Under the pieces are notes generated by a model. The model saw nothing but the letters and a program-made list of their open reading frames with translations. It was not told where the DNA came from and made no database searches. Below are positions 7,365 through 24,337 of a stretch of 64,000 nucleotides of DNA, in pieces. Origin of the DNA: Trichoplax adhaerens (Eukaryota > Animalia > Placozoa); contig NW_002060947.1 of the NCBI RefSeq assembly GCF_000150275.1, forward strand, positions 8,278,043 to 8,342,042. Reading direction: 5' to 3'. Within the stretch, counting starts at the first letter, position 1. Every line of letters begins with the position of its first letter. The position numbers and the translations under genes were made by a program.

Positions 7365-10300
7365 ATGAGCTTTCCATGGCAATTGCAGTCCATGGTTAGA
7401 ATTATTAGCTTTAGATACAGCCATCGTTAGATAATTCTGCGAGCTTGTTGGATACAAAACATTAGTAATTCAATGTATCTTCTCTCCGGGAAATGCATAT
7501 TTGAAATCTATACTTAAAATGCCTTTCAATAAACTGAATTAACATCTCGTACTCTATTTTTCTGCAAAATGATTAGTTGCGATATTGGATAATATTTAAA
7601 TTGCATAGAATTAAGAGTTTATTTCATGACCTGCTTTTTATTCAAATTTTTTATCTCTATGTGCTTTTTTATAGGTATTACTGTTGCTGATCTTGCCTTG
7701 TTGCTTTACAGGTATGTCTTTTACGCGAAAAGAAACATTTTTCTTCATACGCATTTAAGCTAATGTACTTATTTTATAAACGATAATACGATAATTATAA
7801 TAAGTAAGAGATATTAAAAATATTACCTTACACCGCATGTTACTCAGTACGCTAAGCCATATAGGTTGAGATGATTCAGATTGCTGTAGTTCATAGACAG
7901 ATAAGAAATTAAAACCTATTCCTCCGTGTTTCTCTGTATCTAAGATATCTATTATAAGATCACCTATATCAGTACGTAAAATGGTGATTATAAGCAATCA
8001 AATCTCACGTTTTGCTGTATCGCAAACCCTGGATTATTAATTTTGTAGTTTGCATGTTAAGTTGAATCCATTTTCTAAAGAAAGTACCCATTTATCAGAA
8101 TATTCAATTTGTAAGAACTGTCTAAATCATTTGTTGACTTACTAGAGAGTTAGAGTGTTTAGTCAATAGACATGAAAAATCTTAATGCAGTTACATCTTG
8201 AAGCATGAAAACAAGATTGATCAATCGAATGCAAATAATGGGTTGATTCTCTTGCAGATCCTTGCCAAAACTATCGTTTCTTAAATGATTCTAGCCGATC
8301 AGTTTATGCACAACTACAGAGTAGTCTCATCTCTGATGAAAAGCTCAATAACAGTTGGTATCGATTTAATGGTGGACAAGATAGTCAAGCAATTTTAACT
8401 AAATGCGTAGAAACTTATGGAAAATGTGGATCATTATCACCAGGATGGATGAGGGGTAAACATCCACAAGGTAAAGCCGCGGTCATTCTGCTAGAAGGAT
8501 AATCAGCAAGATAGCGCTAACCAGGGACTACTTTCCACTTTACTTCGTTCTAAAAGAAGTGGAGCAGCAAAATTGGATAGTAGTCCCTACGTAAAGTAAT
8601 TTTATTTCATTTGCCAAGTTCTTCTGGCAGTTTAATGATTAATATAATTTTTATTTTGGATCCTTCAAGTTGGAGATGGCATAGTCAACAGAACAGCCTG
8701 TTTCTACTTTTTCAGTGACTGTTGCGCTTTTAAAGCATCGATCCAAGTTAAAAACTGCAGAGCCTTTATTGTCTATCGCTTACCATCGACATCGCTTCTT
8801 CCTATCAGTAGCCGCTATTGTACAAAGCAGTTAGGTAAATTTAATAGAATACTTTGAATTTGCTACTTAAAACTTGATGATAGCAATTACAAGAGGATAT
8901 AAAATTGGATTATTTGTATTCCGCCACTGGTTTAATAAAATGACTTAGTTCCGCTAACACAAATTGTGCATGCATACCTATAATAGAATGGAAACGATTA
9001 CAACGATACTATAAATTAGCGAAACCCAAGTTAATTCAATTTAAACGCATACTAATTGTATTAACTTTCGATCTATTGATCTCGACAACAAATTCAATCT
9101 AATATCTAGATCGTTGTGATCCAAATCCTTGCATTAATAATGGAGTTTGTAACAAATCAATAGACGATTACACTTGCACATGTGCTGCAAATTATACTGG
9201 AAAAAACTGTGAGATAGGTGCAGTACCCATATTTAAGTAATAGAATCGCAAATTATGCTTAAGATATTGTCTAATTATAAATAATTTTATATTTTGTCCG
9301 ATTTTAATGGGTAAATTTATTGTAATACCAAGACCTCTGCAATCCAAACCCGTGTTTTAACAGTGGAATTTGCAATAGATTAAAAGATGATTATACGTGT
9401 ACATGTATTGCAAATTATACCGGCAAAAATTGTGAGAAAGGTAAGATATTCACGATGTCCTTATTTTACTAATTAAATAATCGATGAATCAAACTCGTTA
9501 ACGTTGAGTTTTATTTTTAATACTGGTGTAGGTGCGTTACATTATTTTGACTAATTTCAATCATGTTCAACCGATTAATTTTAAAATCATTTGAAATTCA
9601 CGCAGCTATTAATTCTTTACCAGTTTTGACGTACAGCTTCAACTAATGCACTAATACGAAGATCATATTTAAATTAGATATCGATCCGTGTAGACGGCAG
9701 CCTTGTGTAAACGGGTTTTGCCTTAGAAACAACTATAGCTATCATTGCTTATGTCTTTCTGGGTATACTGGACAAAACTGTGAACAAGGTTAGAATACCA
9801 TAATATGAGCTTAAGCAAGCATTTAATTTGATATTATCAACCACAATGCTAACAATCGAATAAAAACTTATTCAGCTACTTTGATATACGCATATAAATC
9901 TTAATTTTAGTATAGTATTGACTTATCAATCAAATTTTTATAAATTTATTTCCTGATATCCATTTGTAGATATTGATGAATGCCAAGACGAAGCCAACCC
10001 ATGTCAAGAAATTTGTGTCAATACTTTAGGAAGCTACCGATGCGATTGCAAAGTGGGCAATATCTTACTCAGTAACAAGGAGTGCTATGGTAATGTCGAT
10101 ATCTATGGCATCAAAGATTAAAATAGATAGCCATAAAATTTTCCAGCAGGCAATACTTAACTTCGCAATACAGTGATTGATAAATTGCTAATGGGATAGG
10201 GTAACGTAAGTAATCCACCAACACTAACAACTATAATTACTACAACGATCCGGTTATGAAGTGTAAATCAATGACATTTATAGCTATCGATATATAAAGA

Positions 10301-13300
10301 TGAGGAGAGTAACTCTATAAATATAAAGGCAAAGGTAGTAAACGATTACAAATAGTTATGCGATAACTGTACAATGTGCAATAGGTACTGATGATTAAAT
10401 AGGTAAACATAATCATCGTTAATTATATACAAGTGGATAATTAAGTTTACTGTTTCTTTATCGAAATAGATCCCTGCAAAAATCATACTCAAATTATTGA
10501 CAAAACTAGATCGATTGATTGGAACGATAAAAGCCAAATTCAAAGTGATCATGATAGAATGAATAATACTTGGTATCGATTTAATGCCGACATTAGCAGT
10601 CAGATGTTGGTAACTTATCCAACTTCCATGCTTCAGTGTGGAGCAATATCGCCAGGATGGTTAGCAAGCAATCATCCACATGGTATAATCTCTAATTAAA
10701 TTGTGCTAGATATTAATTGACTTAGATATCGGTATTGCTTGTAGTTCAATATCTGAATACGTACTTCTATCATCTCTCATCCGTTTACAATGTCCATTTA
10801 TTTCGATCCTATACGTAACACCCAATACTAAAATATTTTATCCGTTCTAGAGTAAGAGATTTTATATTTATATTACCTAGTTTCGCAAGGCATTACAGTG
10901 GGTACAGTTTGTTTTGCATGGGCCAATAGCATTTGTCGATGGAATCGGACGATTCATATTAAAAACTGCAAACATTTCTTTACGTATCGATTACCTTCAG
11001 CACCAAATAAATACCAAAGATACTGTACGGCCAACTTTGGTAAGCAACATTATCAACTAAATTCTCAATATTCTCGATTGTAATACGCCTTAATTGATTA
11101 ATATGCCCGTAAATATCCTGTGCACTTTAAAAATTTCATGTTACGTATTAAATTTTTATCATAGCATAGCTGATTCTATTAGTAACTTATTTGCTTATAA
11201 TTCATAAACTCTAAAGATTAGTTATTGAACAAATGCAAATTAAATAAAAATATATTTAAAATGAATCAATATCATTAAAGCTAAAATTGAATCTTATTTA
11301 TTCCTTGATAATTGATAGACTACTGCGATCCTAATCCATGCGTCAATGCTTCTTGTTTACGTCAATCTGATGATTTTTACTGCAAATGTCGTTCTGGATT
11401 TACAGGAAAACGTTGCCAGCTTGGTAATATAAATTCTAGGATTTAGTAAAAAGAGTAAAATCAAATTTGAGAATCATCAATGGTCTTGATTAGTAGTAGC
11501 GGTTTCCGGTTGTATAAACACCCATTTAATCTTATCGGATCATATTGCATTTGTTTACTACTATATGTGAATAAAATTGAAGATATCAATGAATGCCATG
11601 CTAATCCTTGTAAATACGGTAGCTGCATCAATCTCTCTCCAGGCTACCAGTGTATGTGTGATACAGGGTATACTGGGAACCATTGCCAATATGGTAACAT
11701 TACTTATAATTGATTAATAGCCATATTAGCATAATTATAGCCACTTGCATATACTGTTATAATTATATAACATATATATATATATATATACCAAAGCGAG
11801 CAGCTAAACATCAATTGCTCATATATTACTTGTGACTGATTAATAATCCTGTCAAAATGATTATTGCTACTTGCATACACCTTTATAATTATAGATATAA
11901 ACGAATGTCAACAACAAAATGGCAATTGCTCGCATATATGTATTAATACACTCGGCAGCTATTACTGCAAATGTCCAACGGGTTTCTATCACCAAAATAG
12001 TAATCGATGCTTAGGTAAGCTTGCCTAGTTACTGGTAAGTCGGCTTGCAGCTTAGAAGTGATAGATATGGGCATCATTACTGCATTATTATTCATTATAA
12101 AAGTAAGTCTATAGTTATACCTCATTGTCATTACCAACAGTACAACATATTTTTTCTGAATTTCATCTATCTGTTCAGATATGCCTAAAGTTAGAATAGC
12201 TTTCATGTTGTCTACCTAAATGACTTGAAATTGCTTTCTAAATTCTAAGATAACAAAGCCAGTGATTAGATAATGCATATTTTAGGAAATCATAAATAAG
12301 AATGATTCTTATTCTTCTATTATGTTGATATACAGTAATTATATCCTCTTTCGCTTGAATTATTGCATTAACATTCTAATTAAAATACTAAAATACTCGT
12401 AATTCGAAGATCCATGTAGCACCTATCAAACAATGAAAGATTCTACTCGTCTACTAACAAATACAAACCTGATTCCTATGCACTGCGATGAAAATAACAT
12501 TGAATCCAGTTGGTATCGTTTAACTAGCTATGTTGGCGTTAGTTTTATGCTCCCAACACATTGTCCAACAGCATTAAGATGCCAGACTTCATCTCCAGGT
12601 TGGATTAATGGATCACATCCAAGAGGTATTTACAATAATTCCTTGAGAAAATTAATTTTGAATAGAATAATGAATGACTAAATTTTGTTAATATACGAGT
12701 ATCATAGTTTAATAATGATTATTAATGAAATATTTAAGCTAAAGCATAGTACATTATACATGCAGACAATGATTGCTGTGAAGGAATAATTTATTAACAA
12801 ATCTATCATACTCATTTCACAAATTTGCAATTTTTTCGACATTACAAACAATCTATATTTTTAGTTGAAGATGGCATAGTCAACAGAACAGTTTGTTTTA
12901 ATTGGAATAATAATTGCTGTTTTAAAACCCACGATATTATGGTCAAGAATTGCAAGGGATACCATATTTACTATCTGTCTTCACTAACTCGATATCAGTA
13001 TCCTACATGCTCCAGATATTGTACAAGTCAAATAAGTAAGTCAAATTTTCGAATATTAATTCTAAAATATAATCCATATAATTTGATTGCCCTACATTAT
13101 TGCGGCAATCATTGGACTTGTTAGACGTCATACTAAAATTATTTAACAGATCCATGTGATCCAAATCCTTGCAAATATGGTAAATGCAATGCTGAAAATT
13201 TCGCTAATTTCACTTGTCAATGTCTACCTGGCTATGGTGGCAAGCTTTGTGATCAAGGTAACTATTGTATTTTGTATCTAGTCATTCAGTTTCTGCCCCA

Positions 13301-16300
13301 AATTTTCCAGTTGATTTAGTTGCATATTTAGCTTCATAGCTGTCTAGAATAAGCCAATAAGCGCGCAATTTCTTCTTATAATCTCTATTAGGGATTCTGT
13401 AGGTATCTAAGTTACATTCATCAATAACCAATAGAAGATCACATGAAACATACCATCCTAATATTAACACAAATGCTTTTAATTTGAATATTTCATTAAG
13501 TAATAAATCAATGACGTACCTATCTGATTCAATAAATATCTTAAAATTATACTTTCGTTCGTTGCAATTTAGATTGCTGCTATATCTAGTAATGATAAAT
13601 TAAAAATTGAAGTAAGTGTCGTAATTCCCTGAAAGTTATCCAACATTCCATAGAAAGCTTACCATCTGTATTAATGTAAAGTAGATTTGAAATTGTTACT
13701 TCCGTATCGTCGTTGTTCTGCTATTTAGCTATTGCAATATTATATACTACGATATCAGAATTTATAACGGCAAGATGCCTTGATAATTATTGACTGGCTC
13801 GCACTTTTTCAAGAATCATTCATTTTACGATTAAAAGCTTTTTAACAATACCATCATCCCTTGTATAATTTTTTTCTTAATTATTTATTTTATTTAGAAA
13901 TTAATGAATGTTCCTCTAATCCTTGCTACACCGGGAAATGTATCGATCTTATAAATAACTACACTTGTCAGTGTCCCCAAGGAATGACTGGTCCCAATTG
14001 TGATACTGGTAGCTGCATTAATTGCTCAATTAATCTAAATAGTGGATCTAAACCTATAAAATTCACCTTACTATTTGTACGAGCATATCTTACTGTGATT
14101 AATTTTTATAGTCAATAAAGTCCGATTTATTAACTGTGATCTAATTTTGTTGCTCTACGCTACAATAAGCTATACTAGCTTTCAGCATGCACGTATGTAT
14201 ACTTGAAATACATATATAGATATATATATAATATATATATTTGTGATAAGAATACTTATGTATGGAATTTTCAGTAGAGATCTATTTTTTTGTAATTCCT
14301 ATATAATTCTACGTTATAGTAAGCATATAAGCTTACAGTATACACGAATGCATACTTGAATTATATTTATAAAACATGTAAATATAATCATATGTCAGCG
14401 GTATACTCATATGTGACTATTGTGAGCAGAGATCAATTTCTTTATCATAATTTCTTTTTTCTTTCAGATGTAAATGAATGCTTACAAAATAATGGTGGAT
14501 GCAGCCAATTTTGTCACAATACTTTTTCCAGTTATTCTTGTAGCTGTTCTAACGATTTTGAACTCCAAGCTGATAATCTTAACTGCTTCGGTACAAAGTT
14601 AATCTAAAAATACTGCTATTAGTATTAATAATTGATTAAAATTTATTTTATGTCCATAAAACCGCAGCTACTTGGTTACAAATTATTCATTGATACAATA
14701 TTGCTTTTCAAAAACAATAGGCCAAAGCATTTATACCTATCAAAACTGACATTCTTTCCTAATAAAAATACTACATATCATAATAAATGATTATTTTTAT
14801 TGTAGATCCTTGCTCCATCGGGCATATATCTTTTAATAATACATTTACTCAAGCAATTGATATTGCAACTTTGTCCAATATAAACCATCAGTGTCATCGT
14901 TATACGACCAACAATGAATATTCGCGATGGTATCAGGCTAATTTGCAAGATAACTGCAAACACTTAACCAAGTGGGTCAATAACACTCAACAACAAGGTA
15001 TTATAATTAAATACTGAAGCAAAGAGCTTCTAAATTATTCTAAAAGCAAAATTTTTGTTGATGATCAAATGCGATTATCTAGGAAGCTATGATATCTTAT
15101 TGAAATTTCACTTTAGTAGCGAATCATTATTGCTAATAATCCTTACATTCTTAGTCCAGAATGATATAGCAATAAAAAATCGTAGCCTATGCCTCCATTT
15201 TGGTCTTTCAACTTGCTTGAAAACGATGCCCATTAAGACAAAGTCTTGCGGCAATGGATCCATTGTTTATAAAGTAGATCGCTTTTCTGCATGCATTCTC
15301 AATCATTGCAGTCAAATCACCGATTATGGTATATTATTTATTAGCTTTTATAATAGATAGAATGTAATAGCTTGCACATGACCTGATCATCGATTAATTA
15401 TTAATAAATTAAATGCTTGCTACGCCTATTAAAGATTTTTGTAGCTCATCTCCTTGTCAGCATGGACAGTGCCAATCAACAGCAACTGGGTATGAGTGCA
15501 CTTGTTTTAATGGATATCATGGATTAAACTGCCAGTATGAAGGTAATCAGATTGTACTTAGTGTAAGTAAGACTTTGCAGTAGCAAACTTCTTCAACAGA
15601 GATAGCTTTTCACATAAAATGAGATATGAAAGCTACAAAGTCAATCATCAGTAAAAGTTTTATAGCCGTAAAACGGCTTAGGTATCTAAACAACGTTAAT
15701 TTTATCAATATCAGACACGAATCAAATAGAATTAGCAAAAGTGATTATAAAATGTACCAAAACTTTGAATGAAACAGTCCAGGCATAATATTTGTTATTC
15801 TCCGATAGGATTTTCTGTCTATCTTGAAATGGATATTTATTTAAGTCATGCATTGCTCTATTACACTTTGAATATTTTGTACTCAATAGTTTTAAGTTTA
15901 TATAATCAAAATCATTAATAATGACTTGGATAAACAGTCTATAAATACTTGTTTATAAGGGAAAGTCAACCATCTAATCAATAACAAAGTAATCGACAAA
16001 GCTAAGAATACCATACCAATTTCATTTTCGTCAAATTCCTATCTTGCAGTCGATATGACATAGCAAGAAATTATATCAGCTACCCAATCCTATAAGTAGT
16101 CTTCTGAAGGTTTTGATAGCCAATCAGATTTGAAAGTCATCACTTGATCTAATATAGTACAAGACTTTACATCATATTGAAATAGAAGGGCTTCCAACAT
16201 GATGGCAACTTTCGTTTTGCCACTCTGTGAGCATTTGGATTACTGTGGCGCATCCTTGAACTTTTATTTCATTAATTTCGATTATCATAGTCAGTATAGA

Positions 16301-17439
16301 AATGATATGGTGAATTTTTTATGTCGCTAAATGATATCATTGACTGGTGCTTTTTCGCTTTAGATCCGTGTTTATTCAATCCTTGTCTTCGTGGAGAGTG
16401 TTTAGTCACTAGCAATAGCAGTTATAGTTGTCGATGTTTTCCTTTCTATACTGGAAATCATTGCCAAACAGAACTGATAGAAAAGGCTGGTACGATAATA
16501 TCAATAAATATTTCTCCTTATTTTATTCATTTAAGACAGTATTGATTATAAATTGCTGATGAACATAAGCAATCGCAAATTTTCATCATATCCGAATACT
16601 GCATCTTCTTTATTAATTAATAATTTTTTGACTTGATAAAATGAAATACTAAGAAGTTACTAATCAAAGTCTATATTATTTGATCAGTATATTGTCGAAC
16701 CAGACCTAATTCTTGCCTTGAGCTTGCTAAACAAGTACAAAATAAGAAATTAATTAATCAATACTACGACATCTATGATACTAATACTTGCGATCATCAG
16801 CAACCGAAAAAATGGCGTGTGTACTGTGACTTTAACTCGCAGCCAGGCTATGCTTGGACATTAATAGAATCATTTTCTCTAGCAAATTCTCGTCATTCAA
16901 AAATTAATCGCGCTTTTACATATAATTCTCCGATCAATCATCAACGATCGCAGGTTAAATGGTCCTTGTATCGCATCGGCCGCCCTGAGATGTTGCATAT
17001 ATTCAATCGAAATCGAGATTCAAGCAGCGGAGCTTTATGGCGCGCAACATGTAATTTTAATTCTCTTTCCCTTCCTCTTCCTGCTAATCCTGTCGATTAT
17101 ATGCAAGGCTCCTTTTATAGAAAAGGAGGATTCGATTTCTTGACCAATATTGAAGGATTCGATATCTTACAGTACAGGCGCGATGGGGATTGTCGAAATG
17201 TTGATTACTTGAATATTCGCGGCAATTCTTACAGAGGCAAAAGATTTCAATTTTGGGCTAGCGGCAGCTACCATTTAGTGATCGATTCTTTTCGTACAAG
17301 ATGTGATGGGATAACTATTCCAAGATCTGTAAAGAATGAGCATAATTTCGGCCTTTATGCTGGTCGTAATACTCAATTTACATGCAGCTCCGACTCCTCT
17401 AGTATCACAAGTTGGTGGATAGGAGCAAAAGTCAAGTAA
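7365..17439 (+). CDS. Secreted mosaic protein, ~1226 aa: signal peptide, 4x uromodulin/GP2/OIT3-type D8C domain, 12x EGF/cbEGF, C-terminal divergent fibrinogen-related (FReD-like) domain
   Basis: 23 exons in frame (3681 nt): 7365-7394, 7675-7711 (signal peptide); 8258-8470 + 8670-8834 (D8C-1); 9110-9217, 9333-9440, 9678-9788, 9970-10089 (EGF); 10470-10682 + 10881-11039 (D8C-2); 11319-11423, 11583-11693, 11895-12014 (EGF); 12410-12625 + 12865-13035 (D8C-3); 13150-13257, 13898-14008, 14468-14590 (EGF); 14806-14997 + 15155-15328 (degenerate D8C-4); 15435-15542, 16364-16489 (EGF); 16688-17439 (last exon). D8C motifs: DPC..Y..L.D..R...WYRF...C....PGW..G.HP and GIV.RT.CF....CC.....VKNC....Y.L......RYC. 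cbEGF motif: DINEC. Last exon: SCLEL...YYDIY...VYCDF...AWTLI. The first two exons are less certain than the rest. Confidence 0.88.
11772..11790. repeat. (AT)n microsatellite in an intron
   Basis: Run ATATATATATATATATATA read directly. Confidence 0.8.
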
Positions 17440-19728: not shown

Positions 19729-22700
19729 TCTAAGCTATATTTGGGGCTGCACTACATAAGGTATGGAAGATTATATCTAGACAAGACAGAGGCGTATAAT
19801 AATGCATTGGCCTTAGCTTCTATAGGTTGCAATGAAGTTTGCATATCTGAGTTTAATTCTACTTTTAAGGTATACGGAAAATTACATCATAAGATCGGAT
19901 CGCTTATTCCGTTAACCGGCCAAGCGCCAAAGTTCGCTTAGTTATTCTTCTATAATAGTGATAATGAATTGCAAAATAGATTACAACATATCAATAGTGT
20001 TGATGAGAATATATTAAGAAAATTGCGAGATATGCTACATACCGTAAATAGCTATATACATTATACAGTCCTTAAAATGTGCTATTGAAGTTATAAGCGA
20101 AGAAGTAGATATGTCGATAGTCTTGCATGCTGATAAACGTTTACGACCAAATGAAGAGCATTCTGGCGTTATGTTCTACCATCTAGATCTGAAGTTGTGG
20201 TTATAATTCCAGGTGAAACCACAGGCAACTTAGACGTAATACTACGTGGTAGAAATAGTTCACTGCAAAGAATTCAACCCGTACATAGATCATACAATGC
20301 TCTGCATTATCTTTTGCTGTTTCCATTAGGTAATGATAAGTGGAAACTTGGTCTCACCAAAGCCGATCGTCGAACATTGACAGCACCTGATTTTTATAAA
20401 TACCGCCTTCAAATTCAATCAAGTAATTTCAACATTATTTTAAAAAGTATGCAGGTAATGCAACAATACGTAGTTGATCAACGGGCAAAGATTGAATCCA
20501 GCCGCTTAGACTGGGTAAAAAAAAATCATCGAACAATTAGAGCAGAGAAATATTGTGGTTTATACGATGCTGTTAGACAAAATGACGCCGTCAACGCAGG
20601 AAAAAATGGAATTTTACCAATAAGCATTTACGGCAGTCCGAGGTTTTATTCTGAAGCCTTTACAAATACAATGACTATCGTTCGATACCTTGGAAAGCCG
20701 GATTATTTTATAACCTTTGCGACAAATCCTAACTGGAAGAAAATTACTGAATCTCTATTTCTAGGCAATAAGCTTATAATCGGCCAGACTTGTGCTGTCG
20801 TGTTTTTAAAATGAAATTAGATTCTCTTACAGATGATATTTTGAAAAAATGTATCAGGCAAAGTAGTGGCGCGTGTATCAACGATAGAATGGCAAAAGAC
20901 AGGATTAATTCATTGCCGTATCCTTTGATTATGGATACGGAGGGTAAACCTCATACTCCCGAAGTCATTATTTGATGCAGCATATCCAAATTATCATACT
21001 TTAACGCTAAAATATAAATATAATCGATTTATTCTATTTCCAACCATAAACATCATTATAGATAATAGATAAAGTTGTTTCAGCTGAGATTTCTGATGAA
21101 ATCACTAATCCAGACCTATACAATATCGTAACCTGTCATAATATTCATGGACCTTTCGGAGAGTTCAATCCAAGCAGCAACTGCATGACTGTGATAAATG
21201 ATGCTATGAGACACAACAAAGGATTTCCTAATAAGTTACGTAGCCTTATGATTATACAAGAAAACTCCTAACCAGAATATCGGCGTAGATCGCCCGAAAA
21301 TGGCGGTAGAATTCATAAAAAAGGTGATAAATGAATGAAAAACCGTTTTCGGTAATTCTTATGTGGTAGCATATAAATAATCCTTTTCTCTCAATTCGTT
21401 ATCAAGCTCATATTAATGTTGAAGTGTTGTATTCTATACAGGCCGCGAAATACTTATATTGGTATATTCTAAAGGTCCATGATAAAACTGCCATGACTAT
21501 TGAATGCGACAACGTTAACGCTATTATCGGAAATAGCGAAATTCAAAATTACGTAAATGCCAGGTACATGTCTGCAAGTGAGGCATTTTGGAAACATATA
21601 GATTTGAAATACTCAAAAACTACCCTCCTGTGGAAAAATTACCTTGCCATCTACAGAACCAACAAATAGTTTTTTGCAAGAAGAAAATGCTCAAGAAACT
21701 GCTCTGCGAGGTCCACCAGTTACAAAATCGGCCGAGTATATGACTATCTGTATATGCCGAGATATTGCAACCAAACAGATTTTGTAGCCTGATTTTCCGA
21801 GATATTTTACATGGAATCAACAGCGAAAGAAAAGGCAAAGGCGAAAACGAGGAAGGGTAAGTAATATCTATTTCTTATATATCGCTATAATATTATACAG
21901 TACTATTGACTTTCTTAATTCAAATATGATATGTGAATATAAACTTTGTTACAGGAAATAGATTCGGAATCGGGATAAATTAAAGATTTACGAGTACCTG
22001 ATGTATTAGGAAGAATACCGACCACGTCAAAGTGAACAATATTTCCTAAGAATGTTGCTGCACCATAAATGGGGAGCAGTTTCCTTTGAAGATCTAAGAA
22101 TAATCAATGGACAGCTTACGTTTCAAGATGTATGCAAGAGATTAGGGCTAGTGGAAGATGATAGCGAAATAGACGCAGTAATGGAAGAAGCTAAAAAAAT
22201 CCGCTTTGGAAATCAACTAAGAGATATATTCGCCACCATCTTAATTTATTACAGGCAAGCTGATCCAATCCAGTTTTGTGGAAAACGCAAAACGAACTTT
22301 GAGGCGATCATATGAATCAATGTAACATGACTGAGCCATCAGAAACTATAATAAATCAAGTACTTATTTACACCCAGAATAGGCTGCAACGTTAAGGCTT
22401 AGATCTTGCCGATGATTTTCACTTGCCTAGGCCAATTAATCGTAGAACGACATGTAATCTATTGAATGAAGAGACATGTTTTGGCGTATCCTAACTACAA
22501 AATTGCGTAACTGAGCAATATCGAACTCTAAATCCTCAACAACGATAGGTCCAGTATATCTCTTCATATCAATAATATACTATATAATACTGTATATATC
22601 ACCTAAAATTCTAATATCTTCATAATAATTTTTAACCGAAATAGGTTTTTGATAATGTTATAGATTCTATTAATCAACAAGATGGTTGAATATTCACTTT

Positions 22701-24337
22701 GAATGCCCTGATGGCGCAGGGAAAACGTATGTTGTAAATTTAATATTATCCGCAGTACGGACAAATAATCAAATTGCATTAGCTTCGGCTATAAATGGCA
22801 TCGAAGCTACATTATTGGAGAATGGACGAATGCTACATAGCTTATGTAAAGTACCTGTTAATATTACTAAAAACTCAATCTGTAATGTATCTAGGAGGGA
22901 CCAACATGCTGAATTATTTCGATGTGCCAAGATATTGATTATTGATGAAATAAGAATGGGGCATCGATATATTTTTGAATGTGTACATAGAATGCTGTAA
23001 GATGTTCAACAAGATAGTCGACTCTTTGGTTGTATTACCGTTTTATTAGTTGGTGACTGGCGACAAATTTTACCTTTTGCACGCCATTACTCAAGAATAG
23101 AAACTGCGAAGCATGCCTTAAGAACTTATATACTGTACTGTATATAGGATAACGTACATCCACTAAATTGATCGATAAATAAGATAACTGCAATTTCAGA
23201 TACTGATGATCAAGATTATGTAAGATATTTATTAAATATTGGAAACGGGACCGCACCATATCATACGAGCTTACAACAATATAAAGATTCTATTTCCAAC
23301 CATCTGACCATAAACTCTAATTGTATAAATGATCTACTTGATTTCGTATTCGATAATTTATCTGATAACTTTCAAAATACAGCTTAGCTATGTTAAAGTG
23401 CTATTATTTGCCCCATGTATTCTACTGTCGATAAAATTAACAACATCATGCTCAGTAAATTTCCTGGCGAAGTTCGTGAATATAGAAGTTGTTATAAAAT
23501 TCTTGAACACGAATATGATTCTCCACTAGAGTTCATTAATCGATTAAATCCATCAGGATTGCCGCTCCATAACTTACTGTTTAAAAAAGGCTGCTGTATA
23601 ATTGTTTTAAGAAATTTAGACATGAAAAATGGCCATACAAATAGCTGTAGATATGTAATTAAAGAATTGTATGATAACATTATCGACGCAGTCATTGCTA
23701 CAGGCATTAATGCAGGAAAGCAAATATTTATACTACGTTTTAATTCAATTCCAACTGATGCTATTTATCCATTTCATATGTAAAGAAAAAGTTTCCAGTT
23801 CCGGGCTGCATTTGCTATAGCAGCTAATAAATCTCAAGGCCAGATATTAGATAGGATTGGACTGTATCTTGACAGATCAATGTTTACTCATGGTCAATTA
23901 TATGTAGCACTTAGTCGCAGACGCAGTACCAGTATTATTAAAATGCTAACCAAAAACGCGCATTTATCCGATGGTAATACGCAATTTACTGATAATATAG
24001 TATATCCTGAAATTTTGTAAATAAATGCACTTATTAACATAGCATTATCCTATACATATAATATCTACATAGTTGATGTGAGATGATTTTATTGTAAATT
24101 ATCAACGTAAGGCTTGAAATTATATCAATCGTAAATGTAAATTTAAATTAAATTAGGTTATTTTCATGATACCTTTAGTTTTGCGCATGATTTAAATCAT
24201 TAAACAGTGCTATATACAGTACAATACATGCAAATTACAAGGTAAAAATCCAAGAATAGTAGCTGACAAACACGACATTGTCAATATTTTATTATATTTT
24301 CTTCCCTCCGTTCACATGAAAGGGTATTTTTTACTAG
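19729..24337 (+). mobile_element. Decayed Helitron (rolling-circle transposon), probably internally deleted near its 5' end
   Basis: Rep-helicase remnants run throughout. The 3' end is a hairpin CCCT..TTCA-CA-TGAA-AGGG (24304-24324), a short spacer, then CTAG (24334-24337) followed by T, the canonical Helitron terminus. The candidate 5' end A|TCTAAGCTATAT at 19729 is less certain. Confidence 0.9.
19770..24020 (+). pseudogene. Helitron Rep (HUH endonuclease)-Pif1 helicase coding region, disrupted by many stops and frameshifts, with 3 apparent introns
   Basis: Rep-side motifs: YNNALALASIG...FKVYGKLHHKIGSL, GKPDYFITFATNPNW, TIEWQKTGLIHCRI (decayed HUH), AAKYLYWYILK, YVNARYMSASEAFW. Pif1 motifs: GAGKTY, IIDE, GDWRQILP, LNPSGLPLH.L.FK.G..I.VLRNLD, AFA..ANKSQGQ, HGQLYVALSR, ending IVYPEIL* at 24020. 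Apparent introns at 20964-21061, 21857-21954 and 22549-22644. Confidence 0.9.

What the first reader, a model, noticed from the sequence alone, without database searches (positions are those of the whole stretch)
7365..17439. Secreted multi-D8C / EGF / fibrinogen-like mosaic protein with no ZP domain: a candidate mucus microbial decoy-lectin
Seen in sequence: SP-[D8C-EGFx4]-[D8C-EGFx3]-[D8C-EGFx3]-[degenerate D8C-EGFx2]-FReD-like, with no ZP module, transmembrane helix or hydrophobic GPI tail (it ends WWIGAKVK*). The D8C domains carry many N-glycan sequons (NDS, NNS, NRT, NHT, NNT, NRS). Established knowledge: in vertebrate uromodulin and GP2 the glycosylated D8C/D10C domain is the decoy for the bacterial FimH adhesin, and fibrinogen-related domains act as pattern-recognition lectins (ficolins, intelectins, FREPs). 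Inference: this protein obtains multivalency by tandem D8C repetition instead of ZP polymerisation and couples it to a lectin-like head, so it could be a microbe-trapping mucus component of an early-branching animal. I do not recognise this architecture from any described protein.
Basis: partly seen in the sequence, partly recalled or inferred. Interest (0 to 1): 0.8.

Follow-up and report, generated by a model that had tools for sequence, protein, structure and literature searches.

The report
Placozoan D10C–EGF protein with intelectin-like head
This is a real 23-exon Trichoplax gene for a secreted 1226-residue protein that strings four uromodulin/GP2-type D10C modules and EGF repeats onto a C-terminal intelectin-like (fibrinogen-fold) head; the design is undescribed in papers, but it already exists as database gene models and its microbe-trapping role is untested.

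Summary
On the + strand, 7365-17439, 23 GT-AG exons give an open 1226-codon frame: signal peptide, four D10C (D8C) modules each followed by EGF/cbEGF repeats (4, 3, 3, 2), and a 249-residue terminal domain ending at a stop. There is no ZP, TM or GPI tail.

- **D10C modules:** the D10C exons match human GP2/uromodulin D10C (E 1e-14 and 1e-9).
- **Terminal domain:** it has no Pfam hit. It folds confidently (pLDDT 91.7), and its seven best solved-structure matches are all fibrinogen-related domains or intelectin (Z 6.8-8.6). It belongs to the "placozoan intelectin" family of Kamm et al. 2019, with at least 45 copies in this genome.
- **Database models:** Trichoplax sp. H2 has a near-identical, misnamed model (RDD43574.1). 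At least three paralogues share the design. Corals and an anemone have multi-D10C/EGF proteins without this head.
- **Decoy idea:** weakly supported. There is no beta-hairpin and no sequon at the UMOD N275 position. One of four modules has a sequon at the GP2 N65 position.

No RNA, expression or binding evidence was obtained. Other notes of this scan flag further D8C genes and an intelectin-like array elsewhere in this genome. Verdict: new variant of known kinds, moderate interest.

The parts
7365..7394 (+). exon 1: start codon, [10 protein letters not shown] (n-region of the signal peptide)
   Evidence: ATG at 7365, donor GTTAGA. It joins exon 2 in frame. The H2 model uses the same donor. There is no RNA evidence.
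7675..7711 (+). exon 2: [12 protein letters not shown] (hydrophobic core of the signal peptide), ends in phase 1
   Evidence: Acceptor ttttatag, strong donor CAG|GTATGT. The 9-residue hydropathy window peaks at 3.2. The split codon G+AT restores the conserved Asp before Pro-Cys.
8258..8470 (+). exon 3: D10C module 1, first half (DPCQNY...GKHPQ)
   Evidence: Profile of the first halves hits GP2 34-98 at E 1.1e-9. 'DPCQNY' is identical to GP2 61-DPCQNY (PMC8930769).
8670..8834 (+). exon 4: D10C module 1, second half (8 Cys in the module)
   Evidence: PF23283 E 1.1e-4, below cut-off. Profile hit to GP2 101-150 at E 1.4e-14.
9110..9217 (+). exon 5: EGF
   Evidence: PF00008 E 1.3e-9.
9333..9440 (+). 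exon 6: EGF
   Evidence: PF00008 E 1.6e-7.
9678..9788 (+). exon 7: EGF
   Evidence: PF00008 E 1.6e-4.
9970..10089 (+). exon 8: calcium-binding EGF (DIDEC)
   Evidence: PF07645 E 1.9e-9.
10470..10682 (+). exon 9: D10C module 2, first half (DPCKNHT: sequon at the GP2 N65 position)
   Evidence: tblastn to module 1 at E 7e-16; alignment A3 and its PDB hit.
10881..11039 (+). exon 10: D10C module 2, second half (6 Cys in the module)
   Evidence: tblastn E 6e-10; alignment A2 and its PDB hit. No Pfam hit for this exon alone.
11319..11423 (+). exon 11: EGF
   Evidence: PF00008 E 3.4e-7.
11583..11693 (+). exon 12: calcium-binding EGF (DINEC)
   Evidence: PF00008 E 4.8e-7, PF07645 E 2.9e-6.
11895..12014 (+). 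exon 13: calcium-binding EGF (DINEC)
   Evidence: PF07645 E 7.7e-10, PF14670 E 7.5e-9.
12410..12625 (+). exon 14: D10C module 3, first half (NGS sequon at the GP2 N122 / UMOD N232 position)
   Evidence: PF23283 E 0.11; alignment A3 and its PDB hit.
12865..13035 (+). exon 15: D10C module 3, second half (the module has all 10 Cys)
   Evidence: PF23283 E 2.5e-7, 31.2 bits, above cut-off.
13150..13257 (+). exon 16: EGF
   Evidence: PF00008 E 7.3e-5.
13898..14008 (+). exon 17: EGF (EINEC, probably calcium-binding)
   Evidence: PF00008 E 2.3e-7.
14468..14590 (+). exon 18: calcium-binding EGF (DVNEC)
   Evidence: PF14670 E 8.3e-12; PF07645 E 2.3e-5, just below cut-off.
14806..14997 (+). exon 19: degenerate D10C module 4, first half
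   Evidence: Keeps DPC and WY but lacks the CG..SPGW core. No Pfam hit.
15155..15328 (+). exon 20: degenerate D10C module 4, second half (KNRS sequon)
   Evidence: PF23283 E 4.2e-4. 174 nt, phase 1-1. The H2 model P0156 skips it, but paralogues have it.
15435..15542 (+). exon 21: EGF
   Evidence: PF00008 E 3.3e-7.
16364..16489 (+). exon 22: EGF (divergent)
   Evidence: PF00008 E 0.004, below cut-off; six-Cys EGF pattern.
16688..17439 (+). exon 23: intelectin-like, fibrinogen-fold head (249 aa) and stop codon
   Evidence: 382 homologous clusters. AF2 pLDDT 91.7. FReD/intelectin Z 6.8-8.6. PDB profile hit to intelectins at E 2.5e-9 over the first ~55 residues. No Met precedes the domain in this open frame, so it must be spliced in.

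Best explanation
**Shown.** This is one Trichoplax adhaerens gene of 23 exons. It encodes a secreted, Cys-rich (114 Cys) protein of 1226 residues with many N-glycan sequons. The order is: signal peptide; four cassettes of a uromodulin/GP2-type D10C domain followed by EGF and calcium-binding EGF domains (the fourth D10C is degenerate); two more EGFs; and a C-terminal globular head. The head is a divergent fibrinogen-fold domain of the placozoan 'intelectin-like' family. The gene belongs to a placozoan paralogue family of at least four members. Their heads form one clade, so a D10C-EGF stalk was probably fused once to an intelectin-like head and then duplicated.

**Inferred.** The EGF/cbEGF runs form a calcium-stiffened rod that spaces four glycosylated D10C modules. 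By analogy with intelectins, ficolins and tenascins, the terminal head binds a ligand, most likely a glycan, and may oligomerise. The molecule would then act outside the cell as a multivalent cross-linker or agglutinin in the surface coat or mucus, in defence or feeding on biofilms. I put the architecture and secretion at about 0.9, and the lectin/agglutinin role at about 0.35-0.4. The confidence given for this entry (0.5) covers the explanation as a whole.
For: - **Gene model:** (all GT-AG, phase 1-1, open 1226-codon frame). The H2 orthologue P0156 is 90-100% identical over most exons.
- **D10C:**, plus PMC8930769. The sequons at the GP2 N122 and N134 positions, which carry glycans in the GP2 crystal, recur here in module 3 and in modules 1, 3 and 4 respectively.
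- **EGF and cbEGF:**
- **Head:** family of 382 clusters. Conserved 237-position profile that ends at the same place in all members. AF2 pLDDT 91.7, pTM 0.91. Foldseek and VIA-align top hits are only FReDs or intelectin, at Z 8.6 to 6.8, with the next hit (COLFI) at 4.2. The Atlas neighbours are intelectin-1 and cnidarian Fibrinogen_C clusters.
- **Link to the published family:** P0010 (TrispH2_001770) and P0012 (TrispH2_000462) hit the head at E 2.4e-29 and 3.4e-25. Both are on Kamm et al.'s list of putative intelectins.
- **Single fusion:** the heads of the D10C proteins form a clade with SH-aLRT 95 next to the stand-alone placozoan genes (quick tree).
- **Secretion:** the N-terminus is hydrophobic, and a signal peptide directly precedes the first D10C in P0297, P0298 and P0304.
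- **No membrane anchor:** the stop follows the end of the domain, and a Helitron lies downstream.
Against: - The 5' end has two other splice-compatible readings.
- The H2 model skips exon 20 and is 'partial'.
- The head lacks any Pfam FReD hit. Its C-terminal two thirds cannot be aligned by sequence to intelectins, so no ligand-binding or calcium-binding residue could be checked.
- The head carries a ~20-residue insertion with lower pLDDT (66-78).
- No cell-type, mucus or binding data exist for this gene.
- FReD-fold heads also serve non-lectin roles, as in angiopoietins, tenascins and fibrinogen.
Confidence: 0.5

Rival explanations
1. It is a structural matrix or adhesion protein of the fibrillin/tenascin type. 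The EGF/cbEGF rod and D10C modules build or organise extracellular matrix or the glycocalyx. The fibrinogen-fold head serves oligomerisation or binds a matrix or cell-surface partner, not microbes.
For: Tenascins end in a FReD after EGF repeats (their FReDs are among the fold hits). Five cbEGF domains are typical of matrix rods. Kamm et al. called the large FReD proteins 'related to fibrillin'. Cnidarian multi-D10C/EGF relatives carry long EGF runs and no lectin-like head. D10C is combined with other matrix-type tails in this genome (scan notes s1-735891 and s1-732983).
Against: By sequence and tree, the head's nearest relatives are the stand-alone secreted 'intelectin-like' genes. Those are expanded in tandem arrays, and the literature places them in epithelial and mucus-secreting cells (PMC12013895). 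That pattern fits recognition proteins better than matrix.
Confidence: 0.3
2. It is a secreted signalling ligand. The fibrinogen-fold head engages a cell-surface receptor, as in angiopoietins or FGL1, or the EGF repeats act like Notch-ligand repeats.
For: ANGPTL3 and FGL1 are among the best fold matches (Z 8.6 and 7.6). Automatic annotation calls the orthologue 'Notch-like'.
Against: The fold similarity is generic to the superfamily. There is no DSL, MNNL or Notch-specific domain. The 'Notch' name comes only from the EGF repeats. At least four paralogues and at least 45 related heads suggest diversification rather than a conserved ligand-receptor pair.
Confidence: 0.08
3. It is a gene-model artefact: two neighbouring genes, a D10C-EGF gene and a separate single-exon intelectin-like gene, read as one.
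For: Most placozoan intelectin-like genes are stand-alone ~250-aa, essentially single-exon genes. No RNA junction was seen here.
Against: The head's open frame has no Met and no signal peptide before the first conserved Cys. Its acceptor is in phase 1, matching the donor of the preceding EGF exon. The same EGF-to-head arrangement recurs in three paralogous loci and in independent H1 and H2 gene models. The fused heads form their own clade.
Confidence: 0.05
4. It is an unexpressed or decaying paralogue (pseudogene) of the family.
For: Module 4 is degenerate, module 2 has lost four of its ten Cys, and the head has an unusual insertion.
Against: The 3681-nt frame is intact across 23 exons with all splice sites canonical. 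All invariant and nearly invariant family positions are kept in the head. The degenerate fourth module is shared with paralogues, so it is ancestral. Cysteines are lost in pairs.
Confidence: 0.03

Closest known systems
Uromodulin / GP2 decoy module (D10C, formerly D8C; PDB 7P6R, 7PFP)
   Same: Clear sequence homology across the whole D10C (E 1e-14 and 1e-9 for the two halves). The opening motif DPCQNY is identical. Module 3 has all ten Cys. An EGF directly follows D10C, as in UMOD and GP2. Sequons sit at the GP2 N122/UMOD N232 and GP2 N134 positions.
   Different: There are four tandem copies instead of one. No beta-hairpin precedes D10C. No module has a sequon at UMOD N275, and only one has a sequon at GP2 N65. 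There is no ZP polymerisation module and no GPI or TM anchor. Modules 1, 2 and 4 have lost Cys pairs.
Placozoan 'intelectins' (Kamm et al. 2019, PMC6321704; e.g. TrispH2_000462, TrispH2_001770, Ta 60661)
   Same: The head is a member by sequence (E 1e-25 to 1e-29, 36-38% identity) and by tree. It has the same length, the same Cys framework and the same C-terminal STTxWWxG ending.
   Different: Those are stand-alone ~250-aa secreted proteins with their own signal peptide. Here the domain has none and is the last exon of a 1226-aa mosaic protein. It also carries a ~20-residue insertion.
Vertebrate intelectins / X-type lectins (ITLN1 4WMQ, XEEL 4WMO)
   Same: They are the best sequence-profile hits in the PDB (E 2.5e-9 to 6e-7) over the N-terminal FReD-like subdomain. 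The fold match is Z 8.5 over 182 residues.
   Different: The rest of the domain is not alignable by sequence, and the head is ~40 residues shorter. The calcium-dependent diol-binding site could not be mapped. Lectin activity is unproven.
Ficolins, FREPs, angiopoietins, tenascins (canonical FReD, PF00147)
   Same: They share the fold superfamily (Z 6.8-8.6) and the layout of a globular FReD at the C-terminal end of an elongated stalk. Tenascin also has EGF repeats upstream.
   Different: This head has no Pfam PF00147 hit; 13 of 54 aligned sequences (53 relatives plus this head) give weak partial hits. There is no collagen or coiled-coil oligomerisation region.
Cnidarian multi-D10C/EGF proteins (Porites lobata P0296, P. 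lutea P0298, Actinia tenebrosa P0304)
   Same: A signal peptide is followed by 2-5 tandem D10C modules interleaved with EGF pairs; 29-33% identity over 42-76% of the query.
   Different: They end in a long EGF run and a different short C-terminal region, with no intelectin-like head. All are uncharacterised automatic models.

Membership tests
D10C/D8C domain (UMOD/GP2 type, PF23283) | Sequence match to the domain model and to solved GP2/UMOD D10C | tested here: met
   PF23283 hits the second-half exons (E 2.5e-7 above cut-off; 1e-4 and 4e-4 below). Exon profiles hit GP2 at E 1.4e-14 and 1.1e-9, and UMOD at 4e-10 and 1e-6, together covering GP2 62-178.
D10C/D8C domain (UMOD/GP2 type, PF23283) | Ten conserved cysteines forming five disulfides | tested here: met
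   Read from the exon alignments. Module 3 has 10 Cys, module 1 has 8, module 2 has 6 and module 4 is degenerate. Losses are in even numbers. Disulfide pairing itself was not tested.
UMOD/GP2 bipartite 'decoy module' | Beta-hairpin preceding D10C and forming the glycan-shielding groove | tested here: not met
   Each D10C exon starts at (D)PC one or two residues after the last Cys of the preceding cbEGF or the signal peptide. No extra segment is present.
UMOD/GP2 bipartite 'decoy module' | [quoted passage not shown] | tested here: inconclusive
   N275 position: YRLPS, YRLPS and YYLSS, with no sequon in any module. N65 position: NHT in module 2 only, and not shared by paralogues or cnidarian modules. 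The glycan type cannot be tested here.
UMOD/GP2-type ZP filament proteins | ZP module with a membrane anchor or cleavage site for polymerisation | tested here: not met
   The stop comes straight after the head, with no ZP hit in the downstream open stretches. The genome's ZP hits lie in other genes on another contig.
Placozoan intelectin-like family (Kamm et al. 2019) | Full-length homology to listed members, shared Cys framework and C-terminal end | tested here: met
   phmmer E 2.4e-29 (TrispH2_001770) and 3.4e-25 (TrispH2_000462) over residues ~5-248. Alignment A1 and tree agree.
Intelectin / X-type lectin | N-terminal fibrinogen-like subdomain and overall intelectin fold | tested here: met
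   PDB profile hits at E 2.5e-9 (7E1E), 5e-9 (XEEL) and 5.7e-7 (ITLN1), but only over ~55 residues. Z 8.5, rmsd 4.0, 182 residues aligned to 4WMQ.
Intelectin / X-type lectin | Calcium-coordinating and diol-binding residues of the ligand site | not testable with these tools
   No residue-level structural alignment or model coordinates were available, and sequence alignment fails beyond the first subdomain.
Canonical fibrinogen-related domain (PF00147) | Match to the Pfam model at its gathering score | tested here: not met
   No Pfam family at E<=1 for this head. 13 of 54 aligned sequences (53 relatives plus this head) give weak partial hits, and four larger family proteins match only model positions ~4-47.
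Canonical fibrinogen-related domain (PF00147) | FReD three-dimensional fold | tested here: met
   The top seven of 48,161 chains are all FReD or intelectin (Z 8.6-6.8, 160-182 residues aligned), well above the next rows (4.2, 3.5). Foldseek gives probability 1.00 to ANGPTL3 but TM only ~0.4.

The most novel reading that the evidence does not exclude
Placozoans have a lineage-specific family of secreted 'glycan display plus lectin' proteins. Tandem D10C modules, the defence module of uromodulin and GP2, are joined to an X-type-lectin-like head. The protein would work as a soluble multivalent trap for microbes in the surface coat. This would show that the D10C module served epithelial defence before, and independently of, its coupling to ZP polymerisation in vertebrates.
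Probability: 0.2. Interest if true: 0.7.

Novelty: new variant of a known kind. Interest (0 to 1): 0.45.

Why it matters
D10C is known functionally only from vertebrate uromodulin and GP2, where one copy on a ZP filament displays a glycan that captures bacterial FimH. This report shows the same domain, down to the DPCQNY opening motif and two GP2 glycosylation positions, in tandem arrays in placozoans and cnidarians. In placozoans it is fused to a member of their expanded intelectin-like family.

That gives a concrete, cloneable candidate for asking what D10C did in early animals, and whether placozoan 'intelectins' are lectins at all.

It also corrects public annotation. The 'Neurogenic locus notch-like protein 1' name is wrong, the H2 model is partial, and an exon is missing from it. 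Finally, it points to a widespread fibrinogen-fold domain family, found in sponges, cnidarians, placozoans and some bacteria, that has no Pfam model.

Tried and rejected
- **My own first start site.** ATG 7626-7674 ([16 protein letters not shown]) is phase-compatible but uses a weaker donor.
- **The H2 5' model.** It uses the same introns in another frame plus a 64-nt exon at 8047-8110. It is splice-consistent but has no start codon, and it replaces the conserved Asp before Pro-Cys with Tyr. I kept it only as an alternative.
- **RNA or small-protein evidence for the N-terminus.** The search for homologous proteins with exon 3 found nothing.
- **A UMOD-like D10C-ZP gene in the paralogue cluster on C1412.** The ZP hit belongs to a separate Kringle-cbEGF-ZP gene, beyond a ribosomal-protein-like open frame (read by eye only).
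- **Head as a fibrillar-collagen C-propeptide (COLFI).** Only Z 4.2.
- **Literature.** No paper holds both D8C and Trichoplax. D10C/VWDE/cnidarian and coral uromodulin searches gave nothing on this architecture. The supplement of PMC12013895 has no entry for these genes.
- **Joined model.** The spliced model was not sent to any search or fold tool. All searches used single exons by reference or database proteins. Exons were joined only inside a script, to count length, stops, Cys and sequons.


Full report
**Setting.** The window is AT-rich (30-40% GC) with short introns. Earlier notes of this scan name the genome as Trichoplax adhaerens. The near-identity of the gene to a Trichoplax sp. H2 protein agrees with that.

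**Observation.** Translating the + strand between 7.2 and 17.6 kb gives a regular series of Cys-rich open stretches.

- Pfam, run exon by exon and by reference, finds EGF, EGF_CA or FXa_inhibition in all twelve EGF exons. Eleven reach the curated cut-off. The last one does not (E 0.004).
- D8C_UMOD (PF23283) matches the second-half exons of modules 1, 3 and 4. Only module 3 passes the cut-off.
- Module 2 is recognised by paralogy (tblastn E 1e-9 to 1e-16).
- Splice-site analysis shows that every exon from the second onward is in phase 1-1.

I joined the exons only inside that script, and only to count.

**5' end.** Three readings are splice-compatible.

Exons 7365-7394 and 7675-7711 give [22 protein letters not shown], then DPCQNY. 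It uses the strongest donor (CAG|GTATGT) and gives a hydrophobic core. It also restores the Asp before Pro-Cys that nearly all D10C modules have. That Asp corresponds to GP2 D61 / UMOD D172 (PMC8930769).
- **My alternative.** ATG 7626-7674.
- **The partial H2 model.** It uses another frame plus an extra 64-nt exon.

The last two are less convincing. In the relatives P0297, P0298 and P0304 a signal peptide directly precedes the first D10C. No RNA evidence was found.

**D10C modules.** Profiles of the four first-half and four second-half exons hit only GP2 and uromodulin with significance in the PDB (E 1.1e-9 and 1.4e-14 for GP2). Together they cover GP2 residues 62-178, which is the D10C domain as redefined by Stsiapanava et al. 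2022.

- Module 3 keeps all ten Cys. Module 1 has eight and module 2 has six. Module 4 is degenerate, as it is in the paralogues.
- The motif DPCQNY of module 1 is identical to GP2 61-DPCQNY.
- The sequons compare with the experimentally glycosylated GP2 sites as follows:

| GP2 / UMOD site | Status in this protein |
|---|---|
| GP2 N134 | NRT or NRS in modules 1, 3 and 4 |
| GP2 N122 (= UMOD N232) | NGS in module 3 |
| GP2 N65 (FimH-binding site) | NHT in module 2 only |
| UMOD N275 | no sequon in any module |

- The N65-type sequon is absent from all 17 other modules aligned.
- No beta-hairpin precedes any D10C.

So the domain is a true D10C, but the specific decoy groove of UMOD/GP2 is not reproduced.

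**The head.** The last exon (16688-17439) has no Pfam hit even at E<=1. It has 382 homologous clusters at 50% identity.

- An alignment of 54 sequences gives a clean 237-position profile. Its six invariant positions include five Cys, and the common ending is STTxWWxG.
- AlphaFold2 on this alignment gives pLDDT 91.7 and pTM 0.91.
- Against 48,161 PDB representatives, the seven best matches are ANGPTL3, intelectin-1, H-ficolin, FGL1 and three fibrinogen chains (Z 8.6-6.8). Then come the procollagen C-propeptide (4.2) and unrelated folds (<=3.5). Foldseek agrees.
- By sequence, only the first ~55 residues align to solved proteins, and best to intelectin-type lectins (E 2.5e-9).
- The ESM Atlas neighbours are intelectin-1 and cnidarian Fibrinogen_C clusters.

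**Link to the literature.** Two of the Trichoplax hits, P0010 (TrispH2_001770) and P0012 (TrispH2_000462), are on the list of 31 'putative intelectins' of Kamm et al. 2019. Those authors describe the same pattern: a short N-terminal FReD, a conserved but unalignable remainder, and tandem gene clusters. [quoted passage not shown] These are plausibly this gene's orthologue and a paralogue, but I could not confirm the identifiers.

Mayorova et al. 2025 place several stand-alone family members in dorsal epithelial cells, mucocytes and gland cells. Nothing is reported for this gene.

**Family context.**

- The T. adhaerens genome has at least 45 near-full copies of the head and 13 D10C second-half matches on five contigs.
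- Heads adjacent to D10C exons occur at four loci: this window, two on contig C1412 and one on C1404.
- I read one of them (C1412: 2.625-2.635 Mb). It has the same layout, including the degenerate last D10C.
- The H2 proteins P0295, P0004 and P0155 show the same layout.
- In a quick ML tree, the heads of the D10C proteins form one clade (SH-aLRT 95) beside stand-alone placozoan genes. The tree holds 81 rows: the top 70 by score plus labelled rows. The careful search did not finish. The result argues for one fusion followed by duplication.
- Porites and Actinia have proteins with 2-5 D10C modules and EGFs but no such head.
- ZP modules exist in this genome, but in other genes.

**What it most likely is.** This is a secreted, glycosylated, calcium-binding rod carrying four D10C modules and a terminal fibrinogen-fold head of a family proposed to be lectins. 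A role as a multivalent extracellular binder or agglutinin at the animal's surface is the best-supported reading. It rests on homology and family context only. A structural matrix role is the main rival.

The two-gene artefact is unlikely for three reasons. The head's open frame has no Met before the domain, its acceptor phase matches the preceding exon, and the arrangement recurs in the paralogues.

**Novelty.** All parts are known kinds. The combination is undescribed in the papers I could search, but it is present in GenBank as misnamed automatic models. Other notes of this scan, on other pieces of this genome, flag further D10C genes with different tails and an intelectin-like array.

Noticed in passing
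window 19729-24017 (+): Decayed Helitron-type transposon. Helitron_like_N (E 4e-27), PIF1 helicase (E 8e-24) and the Pif1 2B domain (E 2e-9) lie in separate open stretches in different frames, so the element is broken.
   Followed up: partly
window 16688-17439; proteins P0009, P0014, P0020, P0045: The head belongs to a large fibrinogen-fold domain family (382 clusters) with no Pfam model. It occurs in a sponge (Oscarella, two tandem copies), cnidarians and placozoans. It also occurs in a Deltaproteobacteria MAG and in metagenomic proteins with up to four tandem copies.
   Followed up: partly
G000:C1412:2548000-2648000: Cluster of D10C-containing genes with different tails. One has the same D10C-EGF-head design (2625022-2635486). 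Another starts EGF-D10C-EGFx5 and continues into larger non-EGF exons (2642167-2647742).
   Followed up: partly
G000:C1412:2660637-2662627: A gene whose open frames read, by eye, as a Kringle-like domain and calcium-binding EGFs, followed by a ZP module. The ZP part is confirmed by PF00100 (E 6e-9 and 1.5e-5). It is one of only two ZP loci found in this genome.
   Followed up: no
P0155 (TRIADDRAFT_64387): The public T. adhaerens model of a paralogue carries an N-terminal TRAP-delta domain (PF05404, E 8e-29) before the D10C/EGF part. This is probably two genes merged by the predictor.
   Followed up: no
window 15155-15328; P0156 (RDD43574.1): The Trichoplax sp. H2 model of this gene skips the second half of the degenerate fourth D10C. 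It has no start codon and is named 'Neurogenic locus notch-like protein 1', although no Notch-specific domain is present.
   Followed up: yes
window ~17090-17160 (head residues ~135-160): A ~20-residue insertion ([17 protein letters not shown] region) that the other 53 aligned family members lack. It coincides with the lowest pLDDT of the model (66-78).
   Followed up: no
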